64,000 nucleotides of DNA from Macrostomum lignano (lineage: Eukaryota). The notes beneath the pieces were generated by a model, which worked only from the letters and a program-made list of their open reading frames with translations, was not told the origin of the DNA and did no database searches. The position numbers and the translations under genes are program-made. Below are positions 24,718 through 61,848 of the stretch, piece after piece. Numbering within the stretch: the stretch's first letter is position 1; each line of letters starts with the position of its first letter. The stretch covers positions 112,444 through 176,443 of the forward strand of contig NIVC01001302.1 of NCBI GenBank assembly GCA_002269645.1, given 5' to 3'.

Positions 24718-25579
24718 TCAGTTTCTGTTCTGCGACTCCCTAATTGGAAAGTACAGCAGCTTTCTAAGCGTTGTTACCGATTCAACAACCTGCTGTCCGT
24801 TGGTTTCTTGATAAACCTGGTCAACCACCTTTGGCAACAGGTGGGTGAACTCTTTGTTCCTTAGATCGACGCTCAAAATGACCTTGTTGAGCGCTTGCGC
24901 GAATGCGCCACCAGTGTTAGGGTCTCTGTGCGACGGCAGGCCCTCCGAGGTGCTGTAGATGTACAGACAGTCTTCCAAGCCTTGTAGGCAAGTCCGCGGT
25001 GTCGCCTGTTGGGTACCCGGCTCGCGACAGGCTTGAATGACGAAGATCTTCGGCTTGCCAGCCAGTCCGGGACACTCGCGCACCTGTTCAAACAACGACT
25101 CCAATAAAACTTTATTATTATCCGAGCCGCAGATGTAGCCATGTTCACCGTGGCTCATCAAGCACAAAAGAAATACGTCGTGCTGTGCATAGTCAGATAT
25201 TGGTCTGTTTAAGCTTAGCAAGGGTTTCTTCATGAAGTGGCTAGTAGTGTTCTTGTGCAGCTCAACATACAGGCCCAGCCGCTTGAAGCCCTGGTACAGT
25301 CCGGTCTGGCTGCTGTCTGCCATGGCGCCTTGTCTTTCGTTAAAACCGGAGTTGTTACACTCTGGATCGATGTTGTTTATCACTATAGCAACGCCTCGGA
25401 AGCTGGCTGTCATGCAGTATCTCTCTTGAACATCGACCGGACTCAGAGTCGGTTGTTGAGATACGCTGTCCGCAGCCTCGAGCGCCTCGCTCCATGGCGA
25501 CGATAAAGTTTCGTGGTCGTCGTCGTCGTCGGCAGCTGCTGCCGACTCTGCGGTAGCGTCTCTTTGATGTCTGCGAATG
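24718..25579 (-). CDS. Caspase (peptidase C14A) domain exon of paralog A
   Basis: RGVAIVINN, ERQGAMAD, LMSHG, KPKIFVIQACRE, YST..G..SHR. Confidence 0.92.
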
Positions 25580-28500
25580 CTGTTTTGAGAGGAAGTGTTT
25601 GACAATATCACATGTACTTCCTAAGCAATGTTTTACTTCACAGGCTCGCTAAATTCTCAAAAAGTTTGAAATTTCAAGTCGACATTGTTTGAGACTCCTC
25701 AAGAGTGTGGATTTTGCTCTTAAAGTTCGAAACTTCACATCGTCGAAAATACTTTTTAGCTCGTAGTCCCTTTCGCTAGCTTAAGAATATTTGATTTGAG
25801 CTGGTAGATTTCCGCTCTAGTGAAAATATGACGAAACAATTCTGCACTCGTGAGTAAATTTTTGAGTCTAGACCAACAGCATTGTCAGGGGGTGGACTTT
25901 TACTTTTCGAAGCATTACATTTTGAGACCTTTGACGTTATTTAGCATATAGCTTTTTTAAACTAATGCTTTATTTTGAACCACGTCTTGCGGGGTGAATA
26001 CCCAGTCATTGCAGTTAAACAAAGTTCTAATAGAATTTTTTACGATGCCCATTTGTTTTCTCTTTGCTATACGTGCTGTATAGTTTTAGCTGCGGAGCAA
26101 AGACTATAGGCAGTTTTCTGCTCACTATTTTACCGCATAAAGAAAATGACGACGACGAGTATTTGAAGTACCATATACAGCTGCTGGCCTTAACGCCTCA
26201 GTGCTTAGCCAGCCATTCGAAATTGAGACAGCTTTGGCATGCATAGAACAAAATTTCAGTCTAAAGCGCTAGTCTTTGAGAAAAGCTCTATTGTATAATA
26301 TTCGAGGGGTATGGACAGTTTGCTCGTAAAACCAGTGTTGCGAGAACTAGCTCGTAGCATGCTATGAAGATGCTTTTCATAGTTATTGCCTGAATACGTT
26401 ATAACAAAAGTTTATTTCGTCTATTGTGCCTTTCATTTATGCCATTGCATTTTCTTCTATCTTGTATAACTTCAAGCGCACCAAAGTTTTGACGCTATTC
26501 TACACTAAGTAAATGGCTTCGAGCCAAAACGTTTTCTCGGACATTTCGTTGGAGGCTTGTTTACACCGCTACCAAATTAGCCATCGAATTACAGAACTAA
26601 CGTAATAATGTACAAAACGAGGACAAAAAAGGTGCTCTTGCACATCTAGCTCGTATAATCCTTCATTTGGCAGTCATCCTGCCAAAATTTGGCGTAATTT
26701 GATGATGGTGTGAACGAATCTCTTGGGAAGTAGTGTTTAACTGTATATTGCTCAAGCAAGGCCGCTTCTGCTATACTTGTTGTACATGTAGTTAATCGCA
26801 TCAACTCTCACCACTGCTTGATGGTATCCTCAACGGCCCGATGGCCTAAGTACACCGCCCACTGCAACGCTGACATGTGGTACTCCCCACGGTGTGACCA
26901 ATAGGCCGGCTGGTCCAAGGCCGGGTCGAGTGCCACCACAACTCTACTGTGATTCTCTCTGGCCGCCCAGATGAGCGGCGTGTTGCCGCAATAGTCCACA
27001 GTGTGGGCCTCCGCCTTCAGCTTTATCAAAGCTTCGACGCACCTGTCGGAGCCTTGAATGGCTGCGTGGGTCAGCGCGGTTTGCTCACACCGATCCTAAA
27101 GAGCGTGAAAGGGTGATCTCCACGATTTAATGGCTTGAGGATGGCGCAATTAGATGTTAAGAGGATCGTTCGACATGTGCAAATAAAATGTCGATGAATC
27201 TTGGTCAACAACAGACAAAAAGCTCTCAGGCCCAATTTTTGTAAACCCAAAGTTTTTGGGACCGCACCTACAGGGAATCGAGCCTACAGGGACTACACCT
27301 ACAGCTACACCTACAGGGACTACACCTACAGCTACACCTACAGGGACTAAAACTACAGCTACACCTACAGGAACTACACCTACAGCTACACCTACAGGGA
27401 CTACACCTACAGCTACACCTACAGGGACTACACCTACACCTACACCTACAGGGACTACACCTGCAGCTACACCTACAGGGAATCGAGCCTACAGGGACTA
27501 AACCTACAGCTACACCTACAGGGACTACACCTACAGCTACACCTACAGGGACTACACCTGCAGCTACACCTACAGGGAATCGAGCCTACAGGGACTACAC
27601 CTACAGCTACACCTACAGGGACTACACCTACAGCTACACCTACAGGGACTACACCTACAGCTACACCTACAGGGACTACACCTACAGCTACACCTACAGG
27701 GACTACACCTACAGCTACACCTACAGGGACTACACCTACAGCTACACCTACAGGGAATCGAGCCTACAGGGACTAAACCTACAGCTACACCTACAGGGAC
27801 TACACCTACAGCTACACCTACAGGGAATCGAGCCTACAGGGACTAAACCTACAGCTACACATACAGGGACGCGAGACTCGGCCGCGTTATTGCGCTATCA
27901 CTACTCACAGCAGGTACAGACTCAAGCTCAGTTTAATGCGCTAGCGTACTAGCCGCGACCGACTCAGCTTAACTTGCCGTACTGGTAGCAAAATGCCAGC
28001 AATGCTTTTGAGAAGCCACACAGGTATTGGGGGGGGGGGGGGCTTGATAAACGAATATAGCTATAACTCACCTTTTTGTTCACATCAGCTCCCATATTGT
28101 GCAATAGCACAACTACATCCGGATGGTCGTTAGCAGCGGCATGCATCAGTGGAGTTTTGAGCGAATTATCCCGCGTGTTAACTTCGTCAACCAGAGTGCG
28201 GCGCCCCTCCAAGGCTTTAAGAATCTCACTCTTTCCATAGTAACTAGCTACTGTAATCGGCGATTGTCCGAGGGTGTCCTTTTCATTGAGCGAAGCTCCG
28301 TGGTTTAGCAGATTGAGCAAAAGGTTTGGATCGCCATATTTTTCTGCCGCAATAAGTGGCAGTTCGTTCAAGTCATTTAGAGATAAACTCGCTTTATTCT
28401 CTTTGATTAGAGACATGATGCAGTCTTCGGAAATCTGGTGTTTTAGATCCGACTCATAGTCTGCATCTTTGCTCTGTTTTACACTTGACTCTTCAGCTAA

Positions 28501-31500
28501 GCAATGCTTTTCTACAATTTTTCTTGAAGACAACGTCCTCCTTGACCGCTTTAGCTTGCTTGAAGTCGCGTTGCCTTTTTGAATTTCCTCTTGAGATGAA
28601 GAGGTGCCACACTTAGTTTTAGGCAAGTTCACAGATATTCCACTCTCAGGTCTCTCCATTAGCTTAGGGGATAACTTAATTTCAGTGGAATCTAAAGACA
28701 CTCCACTCTCTGGACGCTCCGATGGGCCTAAAGACACTACTCCACTCTCAGGTCGCTCAGAAGGATCCTCTGAAGAGACCTCGTTCCCAATCTCGGGTCG
28801 CTCGGGAGGATTCAAAGACGCTTTTTTCCGAATTTCAAGTCGTTCGGGAGGATCCTCCGAAGACACCTCGTTCCCAATCTCGGGTCGCTCGGAGAATTCT
28901 CCGAAGACACCTCGTTCCCAATCTCGGGTCGCTCGGGAGAATTCTCCGAAGACACCTCGTTCCCAATCTCGGGTCGCTCAGGAGGATCCGAAGACACTTC
29001 GTTCCCAATCTCGGGTTGCTCAGAAAGATCCTCTAAAGACACCTCGCTCCCAATCTCGGGTCGCTCGGGAGGATCCTCTGAAGACACAACGTTCCCAACC
29101 TCGGGTCGCTCGGGAGGATCCTCTGAAGAAACCTCGTTCCCAAATCCGGGTCGCTCAGGAGAATATGAAAACACCTCGTTTCCAGATTGCTCTGAAGAGT
29201 TTTCGGTAAGGCTCGTAAATTTGGAAGCCTCGTTTTCATGGCTCACTCGCGGAGATGAAGATGCACCACAGTCTGACGCCACTTGTGGATTCAAAAACGC
29301 CTCGTTCTCTCGACTATCTGGTGCAATAAAAAAATCTGGCTTTTTCAAGACACATTGTTGTTGTGAGTTAAAAGGTACGTAAGTTTTGTCCTTATGGGTT
29401 CTCGACGATGAATACAACGGCCGGTCACTGCTAGGTCCACCGAATGAGATTGGAATCTCACTACTAGGTCTTCTCAACTGACGCGCTCGCGAGGGTATGT
29501 GCCTTTGCGGTGGATCACCTGAACTCAATTGCCTCATAGGTGGCTGTTGCTTTTTCGCCGCCAGTCTTAGCAAAACGGGCGTCTGAGCTGACTGAAGGTT
29601 TCTCTCCGTACTTGTTGCATTGAAGCTCAGTTTTAGCGACTCATCGTTTGGTCTAAAATTTTGTTTCGGTTTTTTGAATTAAATTTTATGTTGCACCTTG
29701 CTCATCGAATTCTTTACTTAACCATCCCGTGTTGCTATATGGTATTTGTTAGTTAATTTTCAAAGGCTTTGGGAAATTGCGCAACTTCTGGCGACGGTCA
29801 ACCCGCAGCCAGCGAGAAGATAAAAATGGTATAGGTCTCCCGATCGCTGACACCTGAGCACGTGAACTTACATGGATACGAACGCACAGGGGTGAAAAAT
29901 TCCCTATAGCTATTCAGTGGTCCGTACAACATGAGTAGCAACTCATTGCCTCAAAGGGTTGGCCCTCAGGAGCGTACATGCAAATCGCACAAGGAAGCAC
30001 GATCCAATGTAAACCCGGAATTAATAGGCGTGGCCATGTTGCGACATCAAACACGGGGGAACTCGGGGAAGCATTGTTGACTTATAAATTTTGCTAGCAT
30101 ACTCGTATTTCAAAAAAATTCTTACTGAACAATATCGAAGTAATTGTGTCCTTCGTACCTGAAAAATAGAAGAAATGTAAATAAAAGTGCTAGCACGATA
30201 CACCTTTAAAATTTAGGATTGAAAAGACATTGCCAGCTTACTGCTGCAGCAGAGTAGACAGAGAAGTTTTACGGCTCTCCCTTGCCATACTCAGCGCCGT
30301 GTTGCCAGCGCTGTTTCTCGCAGTCCAGTCTGCGCCCGACTGCAGCAACAGCCGAGACATTTTCACAGCCACAGCGTCGTCACAGCCGGTTTGGCGGGCC
30401 GCTTGCATCAAAGGCGTGGTCCCGTCTTCAGTGCAGGCGTTCACGTCTACGCCAGCGCCAAGTAGGATCTGCAAGGCTACCAAGTTGCCGCTTAGCATCG
30501 CCGCGTGCAAGCAGGTCCCGCCGCCAACGTCTGCGCAGGTTGGATCGCAGTTGGACAACAACGATCGGGCAATATGTTTATTGTTTTCCTTGCCGTCAGA
30601 GAAAATACACAGGGCGGTTCTGCCGGTTCTGTCGGGCAAATCCGAGTTTGACAACGTTAATAGTTCTCTTAGCTCGCTATTTTGGCTCTTCTCGGCGAAT
30701 CTTACGAGCCGTTTTCGCGTGTCTTCAAGCTGGAAGTTGAATTTTTTAAGTTTCTGTAATAGTTTTACGTCGTAGTAGTGAGGCGCATTCACAGCAGCAT
30801 CGATTCGAGCAATCTAATCACGCGACTGATGTACTCGTAAAAAGCGATGTGCAGCCGTATCACGCCACTACGAGCTAAATTGGTCTGATCTGGTGAGCGG
30901 GCATTTAGGCTGGTGACAAATATTTTCAGGAAAAATTAGAGATCCGACGACTTTCACATATTTTTCGTTGCTTTGTACATCAGTCGAGTGATTTGACCAA
31001 GCATAACTGATACGCGGCTTGAATGAGCTTTGAAGGAACAAACTCATACTTCTGAGCTGTGTTAAACTGCACAGTTAAGCGATGTGAGTCTTACTGTGTG
31101 CTCCAAGAAGATTGAGCGGGGTCCGGCATGATTAAAACCGATTTCACTAAAATAGTAGCAATTTGGTAGCCGATTAAAATTTTCTTGTGTGACTCGGTAA
31201 GTTGATCAATCAAGCTATAAACATACTTTTCAATCATCTGCGCGATATCATTCTTGCCGCCATCTTTCGCGATGTCCAACGCTGTGCGACCGTCGCCAGC
31301 TCTGATGTGGATGCAGCTGTCACGCTGTTGGCGGTATCTGCTCTGGCGCAATAGATGCAGCAGATGCTTGGCGCATTTCCAGCTGCCAGCCTGAACAGCC
31401 ACCATGAGAGGCGTGAAGCCCATGCTATTGAGTAACCACTTTGCTTCGAACGGCAGCAGTGCCAGTAGTTGTATATTATCGAGAGCGGCTGCCATGTGCG

Positions 31501-33003
31501 CGGCCGTGTTTCCCGAAGTGTCGCTTGCTCGAGGATCGCAGCCGCTGTGAATCAAATAGCGTACGCACTTGGCAGCCGAGGCTTTTGACTGCAGAGCGTC
31601 GACTGTCGCCGCCAGCATCAAGACCGTCTGACCGTTCTTACCGTAAAACCGCATGAGCTCGGGTGTGACGATCGCCCGAATCGCCTCGAAATCACCTTTC
31701 ATGGCCCACTGGGCGAGCAGCGTCTGGATCTGGTAGTTTAAAGTACATAAAAATACACACATCATTCAGCAAAATTGCGGATGCTACGGTTACGGGGTGC
31801 CATCACCCCAGCCACTTAATGAGTCTTTACACTTCACATTTGAAAAATAACTGAAAAGTCACCAACGAAGCACTGGTCTGCTCAAGCGACCTGTTGCGCT
31901 GTCGGCGACTCCATCTGGCAATTGTACAGCACACAGCCGGTGCAGGAGGTGCTGCTGGTGACGCTCAAGGAAAGTGTCAATCGTGAGATCAAGTTCGTCG
32001 CACGGGAATAAAAAGCTCAAACTTGTGATCGCTCCTACGAGATTTTGCGTCCCTTAGCATTTAAACTGCATCTAACTTCGCACTTCGGTAATCCTTTTTG
32101 TGGCCTGTGGCAATCTCCCACATGCCCATCATTCATACCGCAAATGTGTTCAATATCAGCCTTATTAGGGAAGTTTGAAGTGTTATATTATCATATTTAT
32201 CATTGTTGTGCGTATCTAATTATAGATTTCATAGTGCATCTACTGATAGTGAAATGGACGAGCAACCACTTTTCCTTTTGTAAGGCCAGGAAAACAACTG
32301 GCCTTAACTAAAACAACTTCTTAACTTTATGAGCCTTTGCTTAAGTATAGAAGTAACATTGATGTCTGGCAGTGAATTTGAATCACCTAAGGCGGGAGGA
32401 TAAAGCACGAATAAGTACGATAATTTGTCTCCCTTTGCACAAAATTCTCACCTCGTCAAGTGGCATAACGCAGCTGCAATGAACATAAGCCGCTCTTCCA
32501 TTGTACTCGCCCAGCCACCAGCCGAGGTCGCTTGTACGCCTGTGGAGAATCCACAGAACTTGGCTCACTGCCAGGCTGTGCTCGTCCTCCTCGCGGGCCG
32601 AATAGGCGCGGACAACAACTGCCAAATCTTCCGAGCAGTCAAAATAGAACCAATCGATTGGCCTGGTGTAGCAACTGTCGCCGCAGTAGAACGGGCAGCC
32701 GGGCTGTTGCATTCTGATCTCAGTGATCAGCACCTCTGCAGCAGCTTGCAGCTGGTCAAAGTTGCTGCGCAAGTTAGCCCGGATGCATCGCATGAGACAG
32801 TCGCTGGGAAATATTCCCGTCTGCCCAGTTGATAAGTTTCGACCATGGATTGTTGGACTATCAAATAAAGGCGGGTTACAGGCACAAATAAGGTCACCTG
32901 TTTGCACAGCTAGCACCCTCCCATCTGCAGAGGCTGATTGGCAGCGAGTTGCCGCGTACGTGTAGCTGCAGTCCTCTGGTTCGCCCGTGCTGTTGCTGGC
33001 CAT
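24718..33003 (-). CDS. SH3-ankyrin-caspase fusion gene, paralog A (about 1468 aa if a 1-bp frameshift near 28891 is corrected)
   Basis: Minus-strand exons 33003-32452 (SH3s), 31729-31227 (ANK), 31146-31095 (micro-exon), ~30813-30242 (ANK; acceptor uncertain), 29652-28072 (linker+ANK), 27095-26812 (ANK), 25579-24718 (caspase); all GT-AG, phases 0,2,0,2,0,2. Confidence 0.7.
27270..27870. repeat. 27-bp minisatellite in a paralog A intron
   Basis: cctacagggactacacctacagctaca. Confidence 0.92.
28740..29200 (-). repeat. Coding 45-bp (15-aa) tandem repeat in the paralog A linker exon
   Basis: SSEDPPERPEIGNEV-type units in ORFs 28812..29573 and 27964..28866. Confidence 0.8.
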
Positions 33004-34483: not shown

Positions 34484-34975
34484 GTAGATACCCATATTAT
34501 CATACGCGTAAGGCGGATACAGGTAAACTTCATTCGGGCTCATGAAAGCGTACCAACTCTACCACCAACCAGAACGTCCAGCGCACTTCCCATAGGGTCA
34601 ATTGTCATTATCAGAATCAGGAGTACTAAACGACTCATTCATCGATGAAGAAGCTAACGCCGTCGGTTGTCCAACGTTCGACCTGCTCGCGTCCAGCGGA
34701 CCCATCGAGCACCTGTACTTGTCAGCGGCAGGGCCTACAGAGAACGGAGCATTCTCAGCCCAGTACCAGTTGTCATTCCAGTCGCTGAACTCCCAACGGA
34801 CTCTCCACACTCCAGTGGCGGTGAGCTGGTGCAGCTGCTCCAGTCCCATTCAGTAGTTGAGACTCTCGCCCTGACCGAATCCGCTCGCGTACTCCGACCA
34901 GTTCCGGTTGAAGCTGACGGAGCCGTCGACTCTGTGCTGGAACGTCTGCCAGCAGGTCTCCGACGGATCCTTGAT
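34484..34975 (-). pseudogene. Fibrinogen-related domain (FReD) exon with three in-frame stops
   Basis: WQTFQHRVDGSVSFNRNWSEYASGFG...NY*MGLEQLHQLT...FSTPDSDNDN*PYGKCAGRSGWW*; stops at 34850-34852, 34598-34600 and 34559-34561; acceptor cag at 34976. Confidence 0.75.

Positions 34976-35794: not shown

Positions 35795-35830
<36 letters not shown>
35795..35830. repeat. (ATT)n microsatellite
   Basis: About 12 ATT units. Confidence 0.9.
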
Positions 35831-35831
<1 letters not shown>

Positions 35832-36204
35832 GTCTTATTAGCTATTATTATGTATAATACTCTCACAGGTATTAAACGATACGCGGACTGCCTGCTGTGC
35901 GACGCTGGGGAGCCCGACACTGCCAACAGAGCGGACTTTGTTCGCTCCCAGGCTCTGCGGCGCGCCATCTGACGCGCCCTGCTCTAACTGTGACCTTTGC
36001 TTGCAGGGCCGCGTATTTTGTTATTGTTGTCACAGGTACTAAAGTTCAGCTGAAGTACATAATACCCTACACTGGAGTCCGGAACTTCATGAGATGTATA
36101 TACCTTGTACAAAAGTATGAGATTGGGGGTGAGATTCAGTCATCGTACGAGTACATTTACAGTATGCATCAGACATTATGCATCAGACATGCATGTAAGT
36201 ATAA

Positions 36205-40125: not shown

Positions 40126-40948
40126 TTACGGATTGGTTAACAGATCGCGTGTTGGTGGAAGGTACAGCAGCTTAGAAAGAGTTGTCTCCGAACTCACAAC
40201 CTGAGCGCCGTTAGTCAGTTCCAGAACTCGCTTGACAACTTTAGGCAGCAGGTGAGTGAACTCAACAGATCGTAGGTCGGCGGCCAAGATTTCGTCTTTG
40301 AGCGCTTGAATAAATATGCAACCAGTGTTGGGATCTCGCCCCGACAGCTGACCTCTGCAAGCGCTGTAGATATACAGACAGTCTTGCCCGCGAATGACAT
40401 TGGCTGACTCTGCAGGATGGGAGGTACTCAACAAGCGGCAGGCCTGTACTATAAAAATCTTCGGCTTGCCCGCGAGGCTGTCGCACTGGCGCACCTGGTT
40501 GAACAAAAGCTCGAGTTCGATTCGCCGACCATCAGAACCAATTATATGGCCGTCCTCGCCGTGGCTCATAACGCAGAGCACGAACACATCGTGCTGCTCG
40601 TACTCTGTCTCATGCCTGTTTAGGCTGATTAGATTGTGGCTGTTGAAAAAGTGGCTACTCAAATTATGGTGAATCTCAACGCGCAATCCCAACTTGACGA
40701 AGGCTTGGTACAGTCCTGTCTCATGGGTGTCCGCCATCGCACCGTTTCTCCTGTCTGTATTGTCAAAATCCACATTATTTATCATGATGGCAACGCCTCT
40801 TGAGCTTGGCCTACTCAGCATCCGGTATCGGTCGTTGGGCAGAAGCGCAGGTAGCGGTAATTGTGCACTGATTGCTTCAGAAGCCTCAATTGATGGCATT
40901 TCCTGTGCAGCTTCTTGAGCTCGAGCATCGGTTTGGAGGCTGTTGATG
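40126..40948 (-). CDS. Caspase domain exon of paralog B
   Basis: RGVAIMINN, RRNGAMAD, VMSHG, KPKIFIVQACRL, YSA..G..SGR. Confidence 0.92.
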
Positions 40949-43900
40949 CTGGATTTAAAAAGTGGCTATAAATGTTCATAAAAGACGACAAATTCATATC
41001 CTACGTTATCAGAGGCAACGGTTATAAAATTGTGAAAGCTGGATCGATGTTTATCTAAAGAATATTTGCTCTGTCTACTCGTGAGTAGTGTAGTTAGGAA
41101 TTCTTTAGAATATGGATGCTTAATGCCGCATAAAGTTATACCCACGGACTACTTAAGTACTATCTACTAGTGGTCCTTGGTTATACCAGCTACGAGTATA
41201 ATGATGACAGATTACCTAGCTTTTTGGCCAGAAAATTAAGCCAAAACACCACTTGAATATAGCCTAAAGCAGTTACTTAGGCACGAGAGAAAGAGACTAT
41301 AAAAATAAAACTGCGAAACGAAAAGGCTTAAGTGTGTGCTTCTTATTTGATAGCGCTAGTTGGAATGAGATTACGACAATCAGTTTCATTCTCCACTACA
41401 CTGCTATACACTGTATCTCTAGACGCCTGCACCAGCAAATGCGCTGTAAAAGTTGTGCGCTTTTACGCTCACTGTGTGTAAGTCTAGAAAAGAAATTATA
41501 ATTTCAAATGTACACTCAAATACAGTTTTGAAGCGGAAGAAGTGTAAAGAGGTAAACTTGAGCAGAGAAAGAAGCCTTTACCTCAGCACAATCAAATTCG
41601 CAATCTTATGATGCTGCAAGTAAGTCGCCCACTCCAACGCGCTCATATTATACTCTCCACGATGTGTCCAATTCGACAGATTTTGCAGAACCTCACTCAG
41701 TTTTTCAATTACTCCAACGTGGTTTTCTCTAGCCGCCCAGATCAGAGGCGTGTTACCGCTAAAGTCTTCGGTGTGAGGCTCTGCGCCCAGAGAGAGCAGA
41801 ACGGCAACGCAATCCTTGTTCCCTCGCATAGCCGCGTGCGCTAGAGCCGTAAGCTTGGCTCGATCCTGAAAAGGTTGACAAAGAATCAGGCTTTGATCTT
41901 CTGGGTTGGTATCTCTGTCTCTTGATGGGCGCCCCTACCCGTGTCTCCTAGGCCGGTGAATACCACGTCCAAGGGTCGGCAAAAGTTAAATTCCTCTCAT
42001 TCGTTATTAGTGGAGATCGAGCTTTCTTTATGAGGGCGCTACAATGTTTGTGGGGTGCTGGGACCCTCTACGTAAGACATTGATACTGCTAGTTCTAACT
42101 CCACCATCTCCAACTGGCAAGCAACGTGATCCGGGGCTGAAAGCTCCTGCCCTCGTTCTGAGCAGCTGCTCAATACGCCAGGACCGTTCAGGCGGGGGCA
42201 AACGAGGACGCGGAGATACGTAGACTGCATCTTGAGCGATGCTGGGGCGACCGAAACCGTCAATGGGCCCGACATTGTCCTCTCGCTGGCACTTCGGCGC
42301 GCCTATCTGACGCTCCATCCACTGACTTACTAGGGGACTGTATCACGCCTTTGTTGTTGTTGTTAGTTCTAATTCCGAATACATGTATTCGCTATTTTAA
42401 ACTTTGCTGCTACTCTTACCCCTTGACTGAGATCGGTGGCTCCCATCTCGTGCAAAAGCTTTATTGTTGTCGGATAATTGTTTAAAGCGGCAAGCATCAC
42501 AGGCGTCTTCAGCGAGTTGTCTGGCGTGTTAACGGCTCGCTTAAGATCTTCTTTGTCAACCGACTGACGCAACTTACTTAGCGTCGTATTGTCCCCGTTA
42601 CTACTAGCAACCGCTACCTGCGTCTGTCCGAGCGAATTGTAACTTTCTAGAACAGGATTTCTTACAGGCAAATAAGACTCAGCTTCACTTATGTGTTCGT
42701 CGGCAGACCCTGGCCTTGTTGCAGGAGACGAGCGAATTTGGCGACTGGGTGCAGGGAAGACAAATTCTGTGGTGCTTTTTTCTCAGAATGTGGAGTAAAT
42801 ACCAGGCGCTCGGAATTCTCTGCTGCTGCAGGGCCCTCAGATTTATGAGGAAGTCTAAAATCCAGTTTTTTCATAGCGAATTAGTGTATATAATTCGGCA
42901 GACAATTGCGTAATGTATAATTCTTAACTGAAACGGCGTCCGGATACTCGTAAGAGTGAAAATAAAAATTACTCACTGAACTGTGTCGAAATAATCCTTG
43001 CCTTCATATCTGAAAGGTAGTTTAAATGCATATATAATATACGAACGTATTTTCACAAGTCAGACTTCAGATGATCAAATAAGTCAAACTTTTACTTCCA
43101 TAATGGCATCAACCTAAGCTTCTAGTGTGAAACTAACAAGGTCTAACACGCATCCTTTAATTAGGATTTAGGAGCCTTAGAAATTTCTTTAGTACGAGTA
43201 CTACTTAACTAACAAATCTTACTCCTCAAGCAGCTTCACAAGCGAATGCTTGTTGCTTTTCCGAGCCAGTTGCAAAGCAGTGCATCCGTTTCGGTCTCTT
43301 AAATTCCAGTTAGCATCATTCTCCAGTAGTTTTTTGGCCACCTGCACCGACTGTGAGTCACTGCAGCAGTCGCTACTGGCTAGGCGCATCAGCGGCGTCG
43401 ATCCGTCCTCTGCTGGAGCGTTCACATTGACGTCGAGTGCGATGAGCTCACGCACGGCTTCTAAATTTCCACTGTTTACTGCCGCGTGTAGGCAGGTGTT
43501 GCCAGTAGCATCTGCGCATGTTGGATCGGCTCTAATAGCTTCGTTCATGATGTCGCTGCACACTCCGGTTCCGCTAGAAATTCTCCACAGCTTGGTTCGG
43601 CCTTTCTCGTCTGGCACATCGCACTTGCAGATCGTTCGCTGGTGCTCGCAAGGAGCAACAGCTTGTAACTGGGCCAAATGGTCCTAGTGGAGTGTGAGCA
43701 GAGTAAAATGGCATTCAGTTAATCAATTCTAACGAAGTTTTAATCTCCTTGGCAAGAAGTTGTGACTTTAAAATTTTGAAAATTTATAGAAAAAAAACAA
43801 AATCTAAAATTTTGCATTGCGTACAATTTTGAGCCATCAACTAAAATAGCAACGAGGGGCAGAGCAGATGAGTGATAAACGCGTCTGGCTATTGCGTCAC

Positions 43901-54960: not shown

Positions 54961-55837
54961 TTAATTTCTGTTTTGAACTCTAATTGGGGGAAAGTAGAGA
55001 TGCTTCTGCAGAGTAACTACCCATTCGACTACCTGTCGGCCCCCTGTTGCTTGATTAACTTGATTAGCAACTTGCAGCAACAGGTGGTTGTTGAAGTCTT
55101 CGAACCGCAGGTCGGCCGCCATGATGACGTCACGGAATATGTTAGTGAAAATGCCGCCAGTTGAACCACTTCGCTCCGACCCCAGACCCTCGGAAGTGCT
55201 GTAGATGTACAGGCAGTCTTCCAGACATTGCACCCGAGTTCGCGGCGCCACAGGCCCATCCACTACTCGGCAAGCTTGGACAATAAAAATCTTCGGCTTG
55301 CCACGGAGGCCGGGACACTCGCGCACCTGGCTGAACAAAGACTCCAGTTCGATTCTGTGGCCGTCTGTACTGAATATGCAGCCGTTATGGCCGTGGCTCA
55401 TGACGCACAATACAAAAACATCATGCTGCTGGTATTGTGTCACAGGCCTGTTTATAGCGGGCAGGTAGTGCGTAAAGAAGTGACTTGTCAGGTTGCAGTG
55501 AATTTCTACTTCCAGTCCCAACCTCTCGAACGCCTGTGTCAGCCCCGTCTCGTGGCTATCGTTCATTGCTCCATGCCTTCGAGGTAGACTCGCAGTGTTG
55601 AAGTTAACATTGTTTATTATAATTGCAATGCCTCTTGTGGGTCTGTCCATGGAGTATCGATTGGGAGGCAGCGGCATTGGCGGTGCTGTTGGCGGTAGCG
55701 ATGGAGGAACGACGGAAGGAGCAGCCGCCGCAGTAGCTTCGCTCCACGGAGCCCCGTTCTCATCTCCAGCCTCAGCAGTGCTTCCTCTGGCACTTGTAGC
55801 CAATGTTCTAGCGTCGCTTTGGTAACTTTTTGGCATA
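54961..55837 (-). CDS. Caspase domain exon of paralog C
   Basis: RGIAIIINN, RRHGAMND, VMSHG, KPKIFIVQACRV, YST..G..SER. Confidence 0.92.
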
Positions 55838-58800
55838 CTAAAATAAATGTTTTTTGCATTTATGCTCTAAAATTAATTAGGATTAATTTTCAAATTCGTG
55901 AGCAACTCTACTAGCTTATTGCTCTGAAATCTTTTATTACGAGCGGTCACGTAAATGGGTTCGGGGGCTTACGTTTATTGATGACAGTGGCTAGCTAAAT
56001 TGTATCACATTGTCCACTACTAGCGTAGAGACGCTACTGTTCAAATAACTGGTCTTTGCCAGGGGCTTACATGCTTACGAAGCGGGTTGTACAAAGCGTG
56101 AAGCTGAAAGAAGTTCCTAATAGTATGAGCTAGTTAGGTAATACAGACCTCATTTATGAAAATTTTCGAATGTCCTTATGACAAAAATCACTTAAGTTCG
56201 ATCTTCTTTCTGCGTAAATCGACTCGAATAATTACATGGCTCGACTTAATGGACTCTTGTAGCCTACGCTCCTAAAAAATTACAGATCTAAAATATCCGT
56301 GACGCAAGTTAAGTTTCCTGGAAGAATTGTTTCATTTACCTCTGTTGGATGAAATCACAGCAGTCCTGAAATTTATTGAACTTGGCCCATTCCAACGCTG
56401 TCATCTTGTACTCCCCTCGATGAGTCCACTCAAGCTCCGGAACTCGACTCAATTCCTTGATCACTTCCAGGTAATTTCCCCTAGCGGCCCAAATTAGAGG
56501 CGTGTTGTCGCAGAAGTCTTTGGTGTTTGCCTCGGCTCCGATATCGATCAGAATGGCCACACAGTTTTGCGACCCCCGCTTGGCGGCGTGCGCTAGGGCG
56601 GTAAGCTTGCACCGGTCCTATTAGTAATTTGAGGCGAGGACGCAATAGGCGAGATGGGCCTGGACGCAACTTAAATCATAGTTATGTAAGCATCAATAAG
56701 TTCTTACCACTTTCTTTACATCGGCTCCCATGCTATGCAGCAACTTCACCGTATCTGGATGGTTATTCGCGGCCGCGTGCATCAGAGGCGTCGAAAGAGA
56801 GTTGTCTGGCTTGTTGACTTCTTCGACCACGTTAAGATGCTTTATATGTGACTTGTTTGTAAAAATTTTAAGTAACTTATTGTTCCCTTGAGTGCTGGCC
56901 ATGCAAATCGGCGTCTGTCCAAGTGAATTTTTAGCCCGAATTGAGGCGCCAGCTTTCAATAATTTAACAGCCAGTTCGGGGTCTGCATCGCTTTTTGCCA
57001 ATAGCATGAGAGGAGTCTCGTTAGTGCCCCGGCTCCACTTCTCATTCAGAACTTTGTCCGGCTCTTCCGCATCGAACAAGCGCTCGATTTCCTCAGCGGA
57101 AATAGATTGCTGTCGTTTAGGAGTACTCGTTTCTTGTTCCGACTCTAGATCGGACTCATCAATTCTGCTTGCCCTTTTTTCTCTTTCCGAACGAATTTGT
57201 TGCAGCGTTAAAGCAAAATTGGATTCTCCTTCTACTCTTTCAGGGTGAATTGAAGATGCTGCACGGATAAGCGGAGTAGTGATAAAGCATTGCTCTTGTT
57301 TTTTCTTCGGATTAATTGACGACACTGGACGATTAGTGAGAGAGTCTTTGTCTGCTTCTTCAGTGTGAGCTGAGGTCGGTGCACCAATATCACAAAATTC
57401 TCTGTCTGATCCTTCAGTGTCAGCAGAAGTCGGCGCACCAATGTCACGAGATTCTTCATCTAATTCTTCAGTGTGAACTGCACTGTGTGAAGGAAGCAGT
57501 TGTCGTTCATTTCCTGATTCTTCTAATTGTCTTAAACCCGAAAAATCTGTGTTTTCTTCCAAAATCGCTTTCGGGCGGTGTGAAGGACCTTGAGGACGAA
57601 TGCGCTTCTTTATTTTTTCCGTCTCATATTTTAAACTAGTAGCTTCAGAGGATTCAGACTTTCGCAGAATATCTTCCTTCATGGACCCTTCAAGACGTCT
57701 TTTAGGAGGCTGCGTCTTCTGGAGTTGCACCATTGAGTACTCAAGGGCTTTGGCTGGAGCTGAGGCAGTAACGATGCTTGTTAAAGAGTGTCTTGCTTGA
57801 CTTGCTCTAAAATATTGTGTTTTAGAAGCATGTTTGTTTAATATAATAAATGCCGGAAATTTTACTTTAGTAACGGTTTGACTATATGAATAACAACGTT
57901 TGCGCTGATCGTGAATCATTGGTTCTTCCAGTTGGGTTTCTTTCTCGAATGTTGTAATTCAAAAGCAACATTCAGAGTGTGAATTATTCAGACTTTGTTA
58001 AAAAGTGGTTTCTGTACTAGTTCTCTGTAGCAATTATAGTCTATGGTACTGTTTGATATTTGTTTTTATGCAGGTGACTGCCTGTGGCAAGGATTTTGTA
58101 TGGGAATGTCTGTGACACGGATGGTCTACGGGAATGTCTGTGGCAAGGATGGTCTACGGGAATGTCTGTGGCAAGGATGGTCTACGGGAATGTCTGTGGC
58201 AAGGATGGTCTACGGGAATGTCTGTGGCAAGGATGGTCTACGGGAATGTCTGTGGCAAGGATGGTCTACGGGAATGTCTGTGGCAAGGATGGTCTATGGG
58301 ACTGTCTGTGACAACGTTTGGTGGCCGGTACAGTCACCGCGTATTTCTCAGCCTAATACCAGTAAGTTTTAAATCGGTAAATGACATTCACGGGTTTTCC
58401 GTGCCGTACGCTCGTACGATTCAAGAAAACAATAAAGTAGCTATAGAAAAAGCAAGCAACTACAGTAGCTAGCTAGTTTCGAGCCTTACCCAGCCACTTC
58501 GAAATACGATCTCCCTTCATATCTAAAATGGAGGAAAATAATGCACAAAGTTAAGAGTAAGAAGAAAGTGCATCGATTTTCGAAAACAAAACATAATACT
58601 TAATATCTTCAAAAAGTCCTAAGATTTTAATTAACAATTCAGATCATTTAAAGTGCTTTAAAGTCATAAATTGTACAGCCTAGTCCTAAGTTAACCTATT
58701 AACAAATTTTTGCTAATGGTACCCTCCAAAACGTATGTTTAGATGTTGGCCGACTTCAAATGATCTAGTTTTACTTTAGTGCCACTTTAGTGCTTACTTT

Positions 58801-61800
58801 AGTACTTGCTGTAATCAAGCAACGAAGCTTTAATGAATAATTTTTGATTCGCAAAAATAATTCTCACTGCGAAAGAAGCTTGACAAGACTGTTCTTTCCG
58901 TGCTCAACAGCGAATTTCAGGGCCGTAGAGCTGCTATTGCTCTCAATCGTCCAGTCCGCACCTGCATCCAGAAGCAGATCAGCAATTGTTACTGACTCGC
59001 TGTCCGAGAGTTCTGAGCTGGTTGCCACGCGCATTAAAGCGGTAACGCCGTCTTCAGTTCGCTCGTTCACGTTTACTCCTGCGTCAATGAGCGCTTTTAT
59101 GACTTCTTCGTTGCCTTTACGCACCGCCGCATGCAAGCAGCTGCTGCCAGCTACGTCGGCACAAGTTGGGTCAGCTTTGCTCATCAGAAGGCGCAGTAGG
59201 GATTCATTGCTCTGGTTGTCCTGGACGCACTGCCACAGAATCGTCCTCCCGTGTATATCTGGTAAGTCGCAGTTGCCAATCGTCAATTTTTGTTGCAGTG
59301 CCGATACGTTGTTGGATTGGAAAAACCGCATAAGCTGGTTTCGAACTTCTCCCTATGGTTTCATATGAGTTATGTATTGCAAACATAGCATTAATAAATG
59401 GTCCAAAATAGAGTCTTTTTAGCTAAACTATGAAAAAAACTGGGCAATGAATGCTTTTGGAAAGTGGCGTAGAAACTTTTGGTGGGTGCCAATGTCTCTT
59501 GGTGGGCACCCCTCTCTCTTTTGGTGGGTGCCACTGTCTCTTGGTGGGCACCCCTCTCTATTTTGGTGGGTGTTACTGTCTCTTGGTGGGCGCCCCTCTC
59601 TCTTTTGGTGGGTGCCACTGTCTCTTGATGGGTACCACTGTCTCTTGGTGGGTGCGACTGTCTCTTGGTGGGCGCCCCTCTCTATTTTGGTGGGTGTTAC
59701 TGTCTCTTGGTGGGCGCCCCTCTCTCTTTTGGTGGGTGCCACTGTCTCTTGGTGGGTACCACTGTCTCTTGGTGGGTGCGACTGTCTCTTGGTGGGTACC
59801 CTTCTCTCTTTTGGTGGGCGCCCACTATTCCTGTCTCTTAGGCCGGTTGCTGCAATGCTCAAAAGATGGCAAAAGTTAAGCTCCTGTCATTGGTCGAGGT
59901 CGGTTACTTTTTAAATTAGTTTTTGGAGAAGTATAACTTTTTGTAGAGTGATTGAGGAGCCACTTGGGGGAGGGGCCTCCCCACCATGGACTTCGCTCTG
60001 CGTACGCCATTGCGTAGAGTTTGAAGACTCAAACTTGAATTTTAATTTATTCTTTTTATCGATGTTATCTATTTATTTACGTAATTTTTGTCTGTTTCAG
60101 GCCAAATGCACCAACCATTGCACAATGAAAAAATCCTATATAGTTAGAGCAGAAGTTAAGAGATTCACCAATTCATTGCTTATGCAAACGGTTTTAGTAA
60201 GCGGGCAGTTCCTCGCCCAAGACACAGTTGCTTGCCATTCACTGGAACGAAATCGTATGAAGCAGTTCTAAGACTCGCTAAATCGCTTTAATATTTGCTA
60301 GACTATTGAAAAATAATTACTCGTAACTTACATTTCTATTAGATTTCCAATTTCCTCATTCCCGTTTTCCTTTGCAATATCGAACGCAGTTAAACCGTTT
60401 CGATCATTATTTGCAACAAAACCTTTCATTTTATAGTACCTTTGCTGCCGAAACAGGTGCAGCAGATGCTTCGCGCACTTCCAGTTGCCCAGCCTTGCGG
60501 CTTCCATTAGAGGCGTGCGTCCCTGGTCATTTTGCTGCCACTTCCAGTCAAATGGCACAGCGGTTACGTGAGTCAGCGCGGTGAGAAATCGAAGGTTGTC
60601 ACTTTGGGTTGCCAGATGTGCTGCTGTGTTCCCCTTTGCATCTATGGAATACGGGCAGCATCCTAGGTGTACTAGATAATGTATACACTTAGCGGTCCCT
60701 GGGCTGCTGTTTTTTGATTCGGCTGCTAGCATCAATACGTTGCGGCCTTGATCACCATGCATCATCATCAGCTCCCTGCTAGCTAGTTGGCGAACTCTTT
60801 CGAAATCGCCTTGGATTACGTGTTCAGACAATACAGTCATGACCTGCAATTGAAAGTTGTTTCGAGTATTCTAAAAGCATTTCTTGATTTTATGAGTTTT
60901 TACAATGCATGCTTATTATTGCTAAAAACTTTTTGCCATGAAACAAAACTAGACTTTGGGTGCAATCACAACTTCAATTATTTGAGCTGCTCGTCTGGGC
61001 GCCCCAGCTAAATAGCTGTAATCTTCAACCATGCATTGAATTTAGTAGTAGGATACTATATCTCAAAATATCGGGATAGATTGTTCAAATTCTAAGGCAG
61101 TCAAGTTTAATTTATTGGCATTTGAAAGCTCTAAGGGACTGCAACAATTAGGCGGGCAGTTGCCACAATGAGACCATTGCCTCACCAGCTGCAGTGTGAC
61201 GATATGCCAACGAAGGCTTTGTATCAGGGTTGTCCTCCAAGACCCTGTAATACAATGCTACTGTTGATGCTATAAGTAACAGTTGCCAAAATGAGTATGA
61301 TTTACCTTTTTTAATGGCCAAACGTAGTCGCTACAAAAGTAACTTGCCCGTTGACCATCGACCTCGCCAATCCACCAGTGACAAGAATCTGCATTGTCGG
61401 TATGCCTGTAAAGTATCCATACAATCTGTCCCACAGTAAGGGTAAGCTCGTCTTCATTTGTGGGAGAGTATGAGCCAATCACAACGGCCAAATCATCATC
61501 GCGCTCAAAGTAAAACATTTCAATTGGTTGTGTGTGTCTATTTCCATCGCAGTAGAACGAGCAACCCGGATGTTGCAAGCTCAGATCAGTAATGAGCGCT
61601 TCAGCGCCAGCTCTCAACTGTTTGAAGTTACGGAGCAAGCGAGCTCGGATGCATCGCTCGAGACAGTTGCTCGAGAACAAGCCCGCATCAAGCGTCGACT
61701 CATTGCGACCTTTGATGTATTCTGTGTCAAACTTAGGCAACTCTGTGGATACAACAAGGTCTCCTGGACGCAAACTTCGGACTTCGCCATCTTCAGAAGC

Positions 61801-61848
61801 TGGATGGCTGCGCTTTGCTACGTAAGTGTAGCACTTAGTGTTACTCAT
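54961..61848 (-). CDS. SH3-ankyrin-caspase fusion gene, paralog C (about 1282 aa, fully open)
   Basis: Exons 61848-61306, 60843-60332, 60241-60169 (least certain), 59334-58868, 57806-56708, 56617-56340, 55837-54961; total 3849 nt = 1283 codons with no internal stop; GT-AG, phases 0,2,0,2,0,2. Confidence 0.78.
58075..58315. repeat. 28-bp minisatellite in a paralog C intron
   Basis: gggaatgtctgtggcaaggatggtctac. Confidence 0.9.
59470..59830. repeat. 20/24-bp compound minisatellite in a paralog C intron
   Basis: tctcttggtgggtgccactg / tcttggtgggcgcccctctctctt alternation. Confidence 0.88.

What the first reader, a model, noticed from the sequence alone, without database searches (positions are those of the whole stretch)
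24718..61848. Tandem family of SH3-ankyrin-caspase fusion genes hidden by splicing
Seen in sequence: the SH3, ankyrin and caspase ORFs recur three times in the same order on the minus strand. Every apparent ORF end coincides with a GT donor (CA|GTAAGC, GA|GTAAGA, CA|GTGAGA after ANK exon 4; TG|GTGAGA, AG|GTAAAG, AG|GTAAAT after ANK exon 6). Phase-matched acceptors exist for every exon, including phase-2 acceptors that lead straight into the caspase frame. Phases 0,2,0,2,0,2 are identical in all three copies. Established: animal initiator caspases normally use CARD or DED prodomains. Inference: this is a large caspase whose recruitment/sensing region is SH3 + about a dozen ankyrin repeats, possibly a one-protein sensor-effector. 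I do not recall this architecture being described, but have not searched.
Basis: partly seen in the sequence, partly recalled or inferred. Interest (0 to 1): 0.92.

Follow-up and report, generated by a model that had tools for sequence, protein, structure and literature searches.

The report
Tandem flatworm SH3-ankyrin-caspase genes
Three neighbouring genes of the free-living flatworm Macrostomum lignano each join an SH3 domain and about ten ankyrin repeats to a caspase; this is a real but already partly catalogued kind of protein ('ANK caspases'), so far reported only from parasitic flatworms.

Summary
The window is Macrostomum lignano DNA, identical to GenBank contig NIVC01001302.1. On the minus strand, three old paralogues (43-57% amino-acid identity, synonymous sites saturated) repeat the same exon order: SH3-containing exon, ankyrin exons, single-exon caspase.

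The ankyrin-to-caspase splice has outside support:
- The RNA-guided GenBank annotation gives copy 3 a 1297-aa Ank+Peptidase_C14 product ending at the caspase stop.
- A near-identical second copy of copy 2 is annotated with exactly the predicted junction.
- Five other M. lignano proteins are colinear across ankyrin block B and the caspase.

Only copy 3 is cleanly intact. Copy 1 has a 1-nt frame break inside a 45-nt coding repeat. The RNA-supported acceptor of copy 2 truncates its protein at 579 aa, before the caspase.

The architecture is not new in kind. Ankyrin-prodomain 'ANK caspases' were described in flatworms (Krasovec et al. 2024) but called parasite-specific.

What looks new is the SH3 head, the tandem triplet, and the presence in a free-living flatworm. 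The same ANK-caspase part also carries other heads (kinase, possibly Mab21-like) in paralogues. Function is inferred only.

The parts
61306..61848 (-). c3 exon 1: ATG at 61848; about 120-aa conserved N-terminal region plus an SH3 domain; phase-0 donor AAAAAG|gtaaat
60332..60843 (-). c3 exon 2: ankyrin block A, first part; phase-2 donor AGAAAT|gtaagt
60190..60241 (-). c3 exon 3: predicted micro-exon. The acceptor ttccag|TGAATGG is clear; the donor is uncertain (60226, 60190 or 60169)
   Evidence: by analogy with the confirmed c2 exon 3
58868..59352 (-). c3 exon 4: ankyrin block A, second part ('DPTCAD'); phase-2 donor TTCGCA|gtgaga
56708..57806 (-). c3 exon 6: long low-complexity linker followed by the start of ankyrin block B. 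The acceptor at 57806 is predicted; the donor AAAGTG|gtaaga is phase 0
56340..56617 (-). c3 exon 7: last two ankyrin repeats ('NTPLIWAAR...'); phase-2 donor AG|gtaaat
54961..55837 (-). c3 exon 8: linker with the YQSD|A motif plus the whole caspase domain (SHG, QACR); stop at 54961-54963. The annotated 1297-aa product ends here
45020..45562 (-). c2 exon 1: N-terminal region with a degenerate SH3 (no Pfam hit)
   Evidence: identical to RNA-derived P0003
44355..44845 (-). c2 exon 2: ankyrin block A, first part
44215..44260 (-). c2 exon 3: 46-nt micro-exon, confirmed by annotated protein P0003
43223..43683 (-). c2 exon 4: ankyrin block A, second part; donor GAGGA|gtaaga
42977..43009 (-). c2 exon 5: 33-nt 'YEGKDYFDTV' exon, confirmed by P0003
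42420..42841 (-). c2 exon 6: shortened linker and ankyrin block B. The RNA-supported acceptor near 42841 gives a stop at 42689 (579-aa product). The alternative acceptor at 42744 keeps the ankyrin frame (1001-aa product)
41582..41865 (-). c2 exon 7: last ankyrin repeats; donor AG|gtaaag
40126..40948 (-). c2 exon 8: linker with the LQTD|A motif plus the caspase domain. The acceptor at 40948 matches the junction in P0030 and P0001
32452..33003 (-). c1 exon 1: N-terminal region plus SH3 (SH3_9, 32.3 bits)
31227..31729 (-). c1 exon 2: ankyrin block A, first part; donor TGAAAA|gtatgt
31095..31146 (-). c1 exon 3: predicted 52-nt micro-exon (ttttag|TGAAATCGG ... ACA|gtaaga)
30242..30753 (-). c1 exon 4: ankyrin block A, second part (acceptor 30753 or 30813); donor GCAGCA|gtaagc
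30126..30158 (-). c1 exon 5: 33-nt 'YEGHNYFDIVQ' exon
28072..29652 (-). c1 exon 6: long linker with 9.5 copies of a 45-nt (15-aa PERPEIGNEVSSEDP) repeat at 28742-29184, then ankyrin block B. A frame break (CC instead of CCC) lies at about 28893. The acceptor at 29652 is predicted
26812..27095 (-). c1 exon 7: last ankyrin repeats; donor TG|gtgaga
24718..25579 (-). c1 exon 8: linker with the HQRD|A motif plus the caspase domain. No ATG lies upstream of the domain except one 4 codons before it

Best explanation
The region holds three tandem, anciently duplicated genes of Macrostomum lignano. Each has 8 coding exons.

Each encodes a long-prodomain caspase with this layout: a conserved N-terminal region with an SH3 domain; ankyrin block A; a 'YEGxxYF' motif; a variable disordered linker; ankyrin block B; a short linker; and a complete caspase (p20+p10) domain on one exon.

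They belong to a flatworm lineage of ankyrin-prodomain caspases. In M. lignano the same 'ankyrin block B + caspase' part is combined with different N-terminal heads: SH3-ANK here, and a protein kinase or a possible Mab21-like domain in paralogues elsewhere in the genome.

Most likely mechanism (inferred, not shown):
- The protein acts like an initiator caspase whose recruitment module is SH3 plus ankyrin repeats instead of CARD or DED.
- Binding of partners to this scaffold brings caspase domains together.
- They are then activated by proximity-induced dimerisation.
- The catalytic part may be released by cleavage at the conserved Q-x-D|A site at the start of the last exon.

Only copy 3 is an unambiguously intact fusion in this assembly.
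For: Shown by tool results:
- Domain content.
- Catalytic His (SHG) and Cys (QACR) are invariant in all three copies. The equivalents of the caspase S1-pocket residues are also kept: R in 'RxG', Q of QAC, and R in 'SxR' (alignment to caspase-3, E 1.7e-28).
- Old duplicates under constraint in every exon: dS is saturated and pN/pS is 0.38-0.65. c2 against its near-identical second copy shows 16 synonymous and 9 non-synonymous codon changes in exons 6-8.
- Exons 1-5 of c2 match the RNA-derived CDS P0003 residue for residue over 524 aa.
- The GenBank product of c3 is 1297 aa with Ank_2 and Peptidase_C14 and ends at 54961. My model gives 1292 aa, so exon 1 must be included.
- The exon 7 to exon 8 junction peptide is found in P0030 and P0001.
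- Residues 762/805-1285 of c3 align in single HSPs with PAA89054.1 (kinase-Ank-caspase), PAA59752.1, PAA80948.1, PAA93319.1 and A0A1I8GZ94. Residues 183-540 align with the ANK-kinase protein PAA75555.1.
- The GenBank annotation is an RNA-seq-guided transcriptome that cuts units at measured trans-splice and poly(A) sites (PMC5730564).
- The caspase frame is closed by a stop 17-41 nt upstream of each proposed acceptor. In c1 and c2 it has no usable ATG upstream of the conserved QxDA motif.
- The exon 7-8 introns (502-1232 nt) look like the other introns.
- No stand-alone caspase product is on record.

Inferred only: recruitment, dimerisation and cleavage at QxD|A.
Against: - No transcript reads were examined directly. 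The evidence comes through other people's gene models.
- The RNA-derived model of c2 stops at 579 aa before ankyrin block B. At least that copy may therefore make an SH3-ANK protein without the caspase.
- c1 has a frame break and apparently no annotated CDS over its first exon.
- In c3 the exon-8 acceptor is followed at once by ATG (ag|tATG), the same layout as at the three gene starts. A trans-spliced stand-alone caspase from c3 is not excluded.
- The inter-subunit linker is only about 17 residues with no conserved Asp, unlike classical caspases.
- The pentapeptide is QACR(E/L/V), not QACxG.
- The N-terminal fold could not be modelled (pLDDT 41).
- The SH3 of c2 is not detected by Pfam.
Confidence: 0.8

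Rival explanations
1. Two genes per unit. An SH3-ankyrin scaffold gene is followed by a separately translated caspase gene. The two are co-transcribed as a polycistronic precursor and separated by spliced-leader trans-splicing at the exon-8 acceptor. The fused models would then be annotation chimeras.
For: - M. lignano trans-splices about 39% of its genes, and about 7% of assembled transcripts are multi-gene precursors (PMC5730564).
- c3 exon 8 begins ag|tATG, like the ag|cATG and ag|aATG at the three gene starts.
- c2 is annotated as a 579-aa ANK-only protein.
- P0030 is named 'g2' of its transcriptional unit and starts at a Met inside exon 7.
Against: - c1 has no ATG before the caspase domain apart from one 4 codons upstream, and the ATG of c2 lies downstream of the conserved QxDA motif.
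- P0030 itself joins exon 7 to exon 8 in frame.
- The annotation pipeline cuts at measured trans-splice and poly(A) sites, yet it left c3 as one 1297-aa ORF.
- Five paralogues elsewhere keep ankyrin block B and the caspase in one ORF.
- No stand-alone product is on record.
- Poly(A) hexamers are no more frequent in the exon 7-8 introns than in the other introns.
Confidence: 0.12
2. The array is largely decaying. Only c3 is a functional fusion. c1 (frameshift) and c2 (exon-6 deletion with frame loss) are pseudogenes or have been reduced to truncated SH3-ANK proteins.
For: - A 1-nt frame break in c1 at about 28893.
- c2's exon 6 is 325-420 nt, against 1099 nt in c3 and about 1580 nt in c1. Its ancestral-type acceptor gives a premature stop.
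- The second copy of c2 (L002) has a disrupted exon 1-2 region and lacks exon 4.
Against: - Downstream of both lesions, all exons stay open, with catalytic residues intact and pN/pS about 0.4.
- c2 against its second copy shows an excess of synonymous changes in exons 6-8 (16 against 9).
- The c1 lesion is a homopolymer-length difference in a tandem repeat of a long-read assembly, a typical assembly error.
- An in-frame acceptor exists in c2 at 42744.
Confidence: 0.3
3. The caspase domain is a non-apoptotic or regulatory protease, or a pseudo-enzyme scaffold. The ankyrin repeats then act as an intramolecular inhibitor rather than as a recruitment module.
For: - The short inter-subunit linker has no conserved Asp.
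- The Gly of QACxG is not kept, and the Trp of 'GSWF' is replaced (GGAF, GCIF, GGIF).
- Ankyrin-repeat proteins can bind caspases, as cited in PMC11463336.
Against: The catalytic dyad and the S1 Arg/Gln/Arg equivalents are all conserved among paralogues that are saturated at synonymous sites.
Confidence: 0.15

Closest known systems
Platyhelminth 'ANK caspases' (Krasovec et al. 2024, Genome Biol Evol, PMC11463336; first noted in Schistosoma, cited there as Lee et al. 2014)
   Same: Ankyrin repeats replace CARD or DED as the caspase prodomain, and the proteins come from the flatworm lineage. The paper places an M. lignano 'protein-kinase prodomain' caspase as sister to this clade. Proteins with that architecture (PAA89054.1, A0A1I8GZ94) are the closest relatives of the caspases in this window.
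   Different: - The paper says the family is restricted to parasitic flatworms and absent from free-living ones. M. lignano is free-living.
- The genes here add an SH3-containing head and a second ankyrin block.
- No parasite sequence appeared among the 150 best caspase-domain hits, so orthology was not shown here.
M. lignano kinase-Ank-caspase (PAA89054.1, BOX15_Mlig030125g1) and Ank/Mab-21_C-like-caspase proteins (PAA59752.1, PAA80948.1, PAA93319.1)
   Same: They share a colinear ankyrin block B plus caspase (32-34% identity over about 500 aa in single HSPs). They are from the same species and the same RNA-guided annotation.
   Different: The N-terminal half differs: a protein kinase, or a region with borderline Mab-21_C hits, instead of SH3 plus ankyrin block A.
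Caspase-3/-6/-7 (closest solved structures) and DED caspases-8/-10
   Same: The caspase fold signature, catalytic dyad and S1 residues are shared. The best PDB hit is a caspase-3 (6wi4, E 1.7e-28). The only hits outside M. lignano in the word-indexed search were a DED-containing bird 'CASPA' protein and one unnamed metagenome protein. The long prodomain resembles that of initiator caspases.
   Different: There is no death-fold prodomain. The inter-subunit linker is very short with no conserved Asp. The prodomain is 700-1200 aa.
M. lignano ANK-kinase proteins (PAA75555.1, BOX15_Mlig034440g1; A0A1I8J237)
   Same: Ankyrin block A, including the 'Y-x-G-x-x-Y-F' end motif, is colinear at 38-40% identity over about 360 aa.
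   Different: They carry two kinase domains, or an unassigned C-terminal region, instead of the linker, ankyrin block B and caspase. They have no SH3 head.
Jellyfish Sanderia malayensis ANK-caspase (EukProt EP00794_P009253)
   Same: Ankyrin repeats lie directly upstream of a caspase domain. It is the only such protein outside M. lignano among the 150 best hits.
   Different: It has two ANK-caspase units in tandem and no SH3. It comes from a distant phylum and is probably an independent fusion.
SH3 + ankyrin scaffold proteins (ASPP/53BP2, OSTF1, SHANK) - recalled from memory, not tested
   Same: SH3 and ankyrin repeats are combined as a protein-protein interaction platform.
   Different: None carries a protease. 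The domain order and sequences are unrelated as far as is known.

Membership tests
Caspases (MEROPS C14A / Pfam Peptidase_C14) | Match to the Peptidase_C14 profile above the gathering score | tested here: met
   103.7, 107.0 and 107.1 bits against a cut-off of 21.4. The model is covered over positions 1-233.
Caspases (MEROPS C14A / Pfam Peptidase_C14) | Catalytic His (SHG) and Cys (QACxG) | tested here: met
   S85-H86-G87 and Q125-A126-C127-R128 are invariant in the three copies. The fifth residue is E/L/V rather than G.
Caspases (MEROPS C14A / Pfam Peptidase_C14) | S1 pocket for Asp (equivalents of Arg179, Gln283 and Arg341) | tested here: met
   R25 ('RxG'), Q125 and R160 ('SxR') are invariant. 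They are aligned with the corresponding caspase-3 residues.
Caspases (MEROPS C14A / Pfam Peptidase_C14) | Inter-subunit linker with an Asp processing site | tested here: not met
   About 17 residues lie between QACR and DCLYIYS. There is no Asp in the linker of c1 or c2, and only VVD|G in c3.
Caspases (MEROPS C14A / Pfam Peptidase_C14) | Asp-directed endopeptidase activity | not testable with these tools
   Needs recombinant enzyme and fluorogenic substrates.
Platyhelminth ANK caspases (PMC11463336) | Ankyrin repeats N-terminal to p20/p10 in one polypeptide | tested here: met
   Spliced c3 carries Ank_2 (237 bits, 9 stretches) plus Peptidase_C14. GenBank lists a 1297-aa product. The junction is in P0030.
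Platyhelminth ANK caspases (PMC11463336) | Placement inside, or sister to, the monophyletic ANK-caspase clade next to the DED caspases | tested here: inconclusive
   Indirect only. The closest paralogue type (kinase-Ank-caspase) was placed sister to that clade by the authors. No parasite ANK caspase was among the best 150 hits of the caspase profile. No tree was built.
Platyhelminth ANK caspases (PMC11463336) | Restriction to parasitic flatworms (a distribution claimed by the authors) | tested here: not met
   The window is M. lignano, a free-living macrostomid.
Initiator caspases with a death-fold prodomain (CARD/DED) | CARD or DED domain in the prodomain | tested here: not met
   No death-fold family reaches E <= 0.01 in the 1292-aa c3 protein or in the separate exons.
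SH3 domain | Sequence match to SH3 profiles or solved SH3 domains | tested here: met
   c1: SH3_9 32.3 bits (cut-off 30) and SH3_1 28.0 (cut-off 22.9). c3: SH3_2 26.5 (cut-off 21.8). c2: none. The profile of the three copies hits DNMBP, CIN85 and Vav SH3 domains at E 2e-6 over residues 122-181.
SH3 domain | SH3 beta-barrel fold | tested here: inconclusive
   The AlphaFold2 model of exon 1, built from a 3-sequence alignment, has mean pLDDT 41.3. It was too poor for a fold search.

The most novel reading that the evidence does not exclude
M. lignano, an early-branching free-living flatworm, has a modular family of single-chain sensor-effector death or immune proteins. A conserved 'ankyrin block B + caspase' part is fused by exon shuffling to interchangeable heads: SH3-ANK (this tandem triplet), a protein kinase, and a possible Mab21/cGAS-like nucleotidyltransferase. 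On this reading, ankyrin-prodomain caspases would predate parasitism. They would be the flatworm replacement for the DED/FADD extrinsic pathway, not an adaptation of parasites.
Probability: 0.3. Interest if true: 0.65.

Novelty: new variant of a known kind. Interest (0 to 1): 0.45.

Why it matters
Flatworms lack FADD, and the parasitic ones lack DED caspases. How they start caspase-dependent death apart from the APAF-1 route is unknown. 'ANK caspases' are the candidate replacement, but they have never been studied functionally and were thought to be specific to parasites.

Finding a multi-copy, constrained SH3-ankyrin-caspase family in M. lignano moves the origin of this architecture to free-living flatworms. 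This holds only if the genes are orthologous to the parasite ones, which was not shown here.

M. lignano is also a tractable model, with transgenesis and RNAi. The question of what ankyrin prodomains recruit therefore becomes experimentally accessible. It also corrects a published statement about the family's distribution.

The practical weight is moderate:
- The proteins are already in databases as 'hypothetical'.
- Nothing about their function is shown.
- Two of the three copies may be defective.

Tried and rejected
- **AlphaFold2 on exon 1.** With a 3-sequence alignment the mean pLDDT was 41. The model was unusable, so no fold search was run.
- **Homologues of exon 1.** The word-indexed search found only mis-predicted M. 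lignano isoforms of c3. No deeper alignment was possible.
- **Recovering the annotated 1297-aa c3 protein.** I enumerated splice-site combinations and got 341 stop-free solutions. My 1292-aa model may therefore differ from the annotated one at one or two boundaries: the exon-3 donor, the exon-6 acceptor or the start codon.
- **Stand-alone caspase products.** Look-ups of the contiguous caspase ORFs of c3 and c2 found nothing on record. This is weak negative evidence.
- **Bacterial promoter/terminator scan of the exon 7-8 intron.** This is irrelevant for a eukaryote and was discarded.
- **Poly(A) hexamer counts in introns.** They did not discriminate between the readings.
- **PDB sequence search with the putative Mab21-like region of paralogue PAA80948.1.** It found nothing. 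That domain call rests on borderline Pfam hits only.
- **Considered and rejected: chance ORFs or a prokaryotic origin.** Both are excluded by 100% identity to M. lignano contig NIVC01001302.1.
- **Considered and rejected: recent segmental duplication.** dS is saturated.

Full report
**What the window is**

A search with the spliced copy-2 protein returned Macrostomum lignano proteins at 70-99% identity. The locus fetched around one of them is 100% identical to the window. That locus is GenBank assembly GCA_002269645.1, contig NIVC01001302.1. The sequence is therefore nuclear DNA of a free-living macrostomid flatworm. The assembly is known to be redundant because of hidden polyploidy (PMC5730564).

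**Check of the observation**

The minus strand carries three units: c1 at 24718-33003, c2 at 40126-45562 and c3 at 54961-61848. Each has the same order of open reading frames.

- Pfam assigns Peptidase_C14 to the last ORF of each unit, at E 1.5e-30 to 1.6e-29.
- Ankyrin families are assigned to all middle ORFs.
- SH3 families reach gathering score on the first ORF of c1 and c3, but not on c2.
- A profile of the three first exons matches solved SH3 domains (DNMBP, CIN85, Vav) at E 2e-6 over residues 122-181. The first 120 residues or so are conserved among the copies but match nothing.

The copies are 41-57% identical in protein. Synonymous sites are saturated: dS is above 1.2 or undefined. pN/pS is 0.38-0.65 in every exon, and the caspase domain is the best conserved part. 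These are old paralogues kept under constraint, not a recent segmental duplication or chance ORFs.

**Gene structure**

Assembling c2 from the inferred sites gives a clean ORF. Its first 524 residues are identical to the RNA-derived GenBank protein BOX15_Mlig000288g1 (P0003). This confirms four introns exactly, including a 46-nt micro-exon.

It is a 33-nt exon encoding '(x)YEG(K/H/R)xYF(D/E)xx', is conserved in all three copies, and is phase 2 in and phase 2 out. Skipping it does not change the frame. There are thus 8 coding exons with donor phases 0,2,0,2,2,0,2.

'ORF ends at a GT' is therefore not independent evidence for those sites.

**Is the caspase exon part of the same gene?**

Several independent lines say yes.

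1. The GenBank annotation lists a 1297-residue product with Ank_2 and Peptidase_C14 hits, ending exactly at window 54961, the c3 caspase stop. My 8-exon c3 model gives 1292 aa. That length can only be reached if exon 1 is included.
2. This annotation is an RNA-seq-guided transcriptome. Transcriptional units were cut at experimentally mapped trans-splice and poly(A) sites (PMC5730564).
3. BOX15_Mlig004809g2 (P0030) lies on another contig and is 97-98.5% identical to c2 exons 6-8. It reads '...KIANLIVL-S-INSLQTDAR...', which is exactly the junction of donor 41582 with acceptor 40948.
4. An exhaustive HMM search with the caspase profile shows that the nearest relatives are other M. lignano proteins with ankyrin repeats directly upstream of the caspase. 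c3 residues 762/805-1285 align with five of them in single HSPs that cross both exon boundaries.
5. The caspase reading frame opens only 17-41 nt upstream of each proposed acceptor. In c1 there is no ATG before the domain except one 4 codons upstream. In c2 the first ATG lies downstream of a motif conserved in all copies.
6. The exon 7-8 introns (502-1232 nt, 37-38% GC) resemble the other introns and are not enriched in poly(A) hexamers.
7. No gene with a stand-alone caspase product is on record.

**State of the three copies**

- **c3** is intact.
- **c1** is open through all exons only if one base is restored where a repeat unit reads CC instead of CCC, at about 28893. This lies inside a 9.5-copy, 45-nt coding repeat. 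It could be a true frameshift or a homopolymer error of the long-read assembly. No CDS appears to be annotated over c1's first exon.
- **c2** has a much shorter exon 6. The acceptor used in the RNA-derived model (about 42841, homologous to the 'attttag|A' acceptors of c1 and c3) leads to a stop at 42689, giving a 579-aa SH3-ANK protein. An acceptor 97 nt downstream (42744) would keep the frame and give 1001 aa.

Exons 6-8 of c2 differ from the second copy by 16 synonymous and 9 non-synonymous codon changes. This suggests they are still under selection.

**Anatomy of the protein**

- *Head.* An N-terminal region of about 120 aa is followed by the SH3 domain.
- *Ankyrin block A* (exons 2-5) ends in 'YxGxxYF'. 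It is colinear at 38-40% identity with M. lignano ANK-kinase proteins.
- *Linker.* A variable, low-complexity linker follows: 15-aa repeats in c1, an acidic and Ser-rich stretch in c3, and mostly deleted in c2.
- *Ankyrin block B* (end of exon 6 plus exon 7) comes next.
- *Exon-8 linker.* It begins with a conserved Q-x-D|A: HQRDA in c1, LQTDA in c2 and YQSDA in c3.
- *Caspase domain.* SHG, QACR and the equivalents of the S1 residues Arg179, Gln283 and Arg341 are invariant. The closest solved structures are caspase-3, then caspase-6 and -7.
- *Unusual points.* The inter-subunit linker is only about 17 residues and has no conserved Asp. No CARD or DED is detectable.

**Most likely mechanism**

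This part is inferred. The protein would be a long-prodomain, initiator-like caspase whose recruitment platform is SH3 plus ankyrin repeats. Partner binding would concentrate the protease domains. Activation would be by dimerisation, which fits the absence of an inter-subunit cleavage site. Cleavage at QxD|A could release the catalytic part.

c3 also has a PLPPNR (PxxPxR-type) motif just before the caspase domain. That would allow an intramolecular SH3 contact, but the motif is not conserved in c1 or c2, so I give it little weight.

**Comparison with what is known**

The literature search found one relevant study, Krasovec et al. 2024 (PMC11463336). It describes 'ANK caspases', caspases with an ankyrin prodomain. 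[quoted passage not shown] For M. lignano it notes only a 'protein kinase prodomain' caspase, sister to the ANK caspases.

M. lignano proteins with that architecture (PAA89054.1, and A0A1I8GZ94 and its cluster) contain ankyrin repeats between the kinase and the caspase. They are the closest relatives of the caspases studied here. The architecture is thus already catalogued in kind, and fused models for these very genes exist in GenBank and UniProt.

What I could not find described:
- the SH3-containing head;
- the two-block ankyrin organisation;
- the tandem triplet;
- the existence of several ankyrin-caspases in a free-living flatworm.

Orthology with the parasite ANK caspases was not demonstrated. 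No parasite sequence was among the 150 best hits. The only ankyrin-caspase outside M. lignano in that list was from a jellyfish. Convergent fusion therefore remains possible.

**Verdict**

The feature is real and correctly located, and the fusion is well supported for at least one copy. Function is unproven. Interest is moderate.

Noticed in passing
window 1-14300: A tandem macro-repeat of about 4.22 kb, with at least 3 copies at 98-100% identity. Each copy has an internal 883-nt duplication and a 52-nt minisatellite array (4406-5526, 8751-9639, 12871-13768). There is no ORF of 110 aa or more.
   Followed up: partly
window 15801-20957 (+): A multi-exon ABC half-transporter gene. ABC_membrane exons lie within ORFs 15801-16349 and 16985-17617. 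ABC_tran exons lie within ORFs 18061-18603 and 20648-20923. The introns are filled with CT-rich satellites.
   Followed up: partly
window 34598-34849 (-): An isolated Fibrinogen_C exon (E 7.5e-9) lies between c1 and c2. It is a possible fibrinogen-related (lectin-type) gene or gene fragment inside the caspase array.
   Followed up: partly
window 50425-50655 (-): An ORF between c2 and c3 carries 'NRQGCCAERL..FDLQV', which by eye resembles an F-type lectin motif. It has no Pfam hit.
   Followed up: partly
window 33004, 45563, 61849 and 55838: All three genes have an AG acceptor one base before the start codon (ag|cATG, ag|aATG, ag|cATG). This suggests a 5'-UTR intron or a spliced-leader acceptor. 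The exon-8 acceptor of c3 has the same layout (ag|tATG).
   Followed up: no
window 27283-27870, 58082-58314, 59476-59822, 37440-38840: Minisatellites of 27, 28 and 42 nt lie inside introns of the caspase genes. A 1.4-kb GA/CT-rich low-complexity tract lies between c1 and c2. Several of these give long spurious ORFs in all frames.
   Followed up: no
paralogues outside the window: PAA59752.1, PAA80948.1, PAA93319.1 (P0043, P0189, P0047): These M. lignano ankyrin-caspases carry a region with borderline Pfam Mab-21_C hits (21.9-24.7 bits against a cut-off of 24.1). PAA80948.1 (P0189) also has, by eye, a 'GS...DxD' nucleotidyltransferase-like motif. If confirmed, this would be a cGAS-like domain fused to a caspase. 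A PDB sequence search gave no support.
   Followed up: partly
locus L002 (NIVC01000713.1:265423-287081): A second copy of c2 lies on another contig. Exons 6-8 are 97-98.5% identical to c2. Exon 1 is 78% identical, exon 2 is split, and exon 4 is absent, with about 7 kb between exon 2 and exon 6. A reverse-transcriptase gene is nearby. The exon 7-8 intron is 98-99% identical, while the exons carry 16 synonymous changes.
   Followed up: partly
P0004 (UniRef A0A1I8J237), outside the window: This protein has an ankyrin block A homologue followed by a C-terminal region of about 570 aa with no Pfam match. It is another head/tail combination in the same M. lignano ankyrin family.
   Followed up: no
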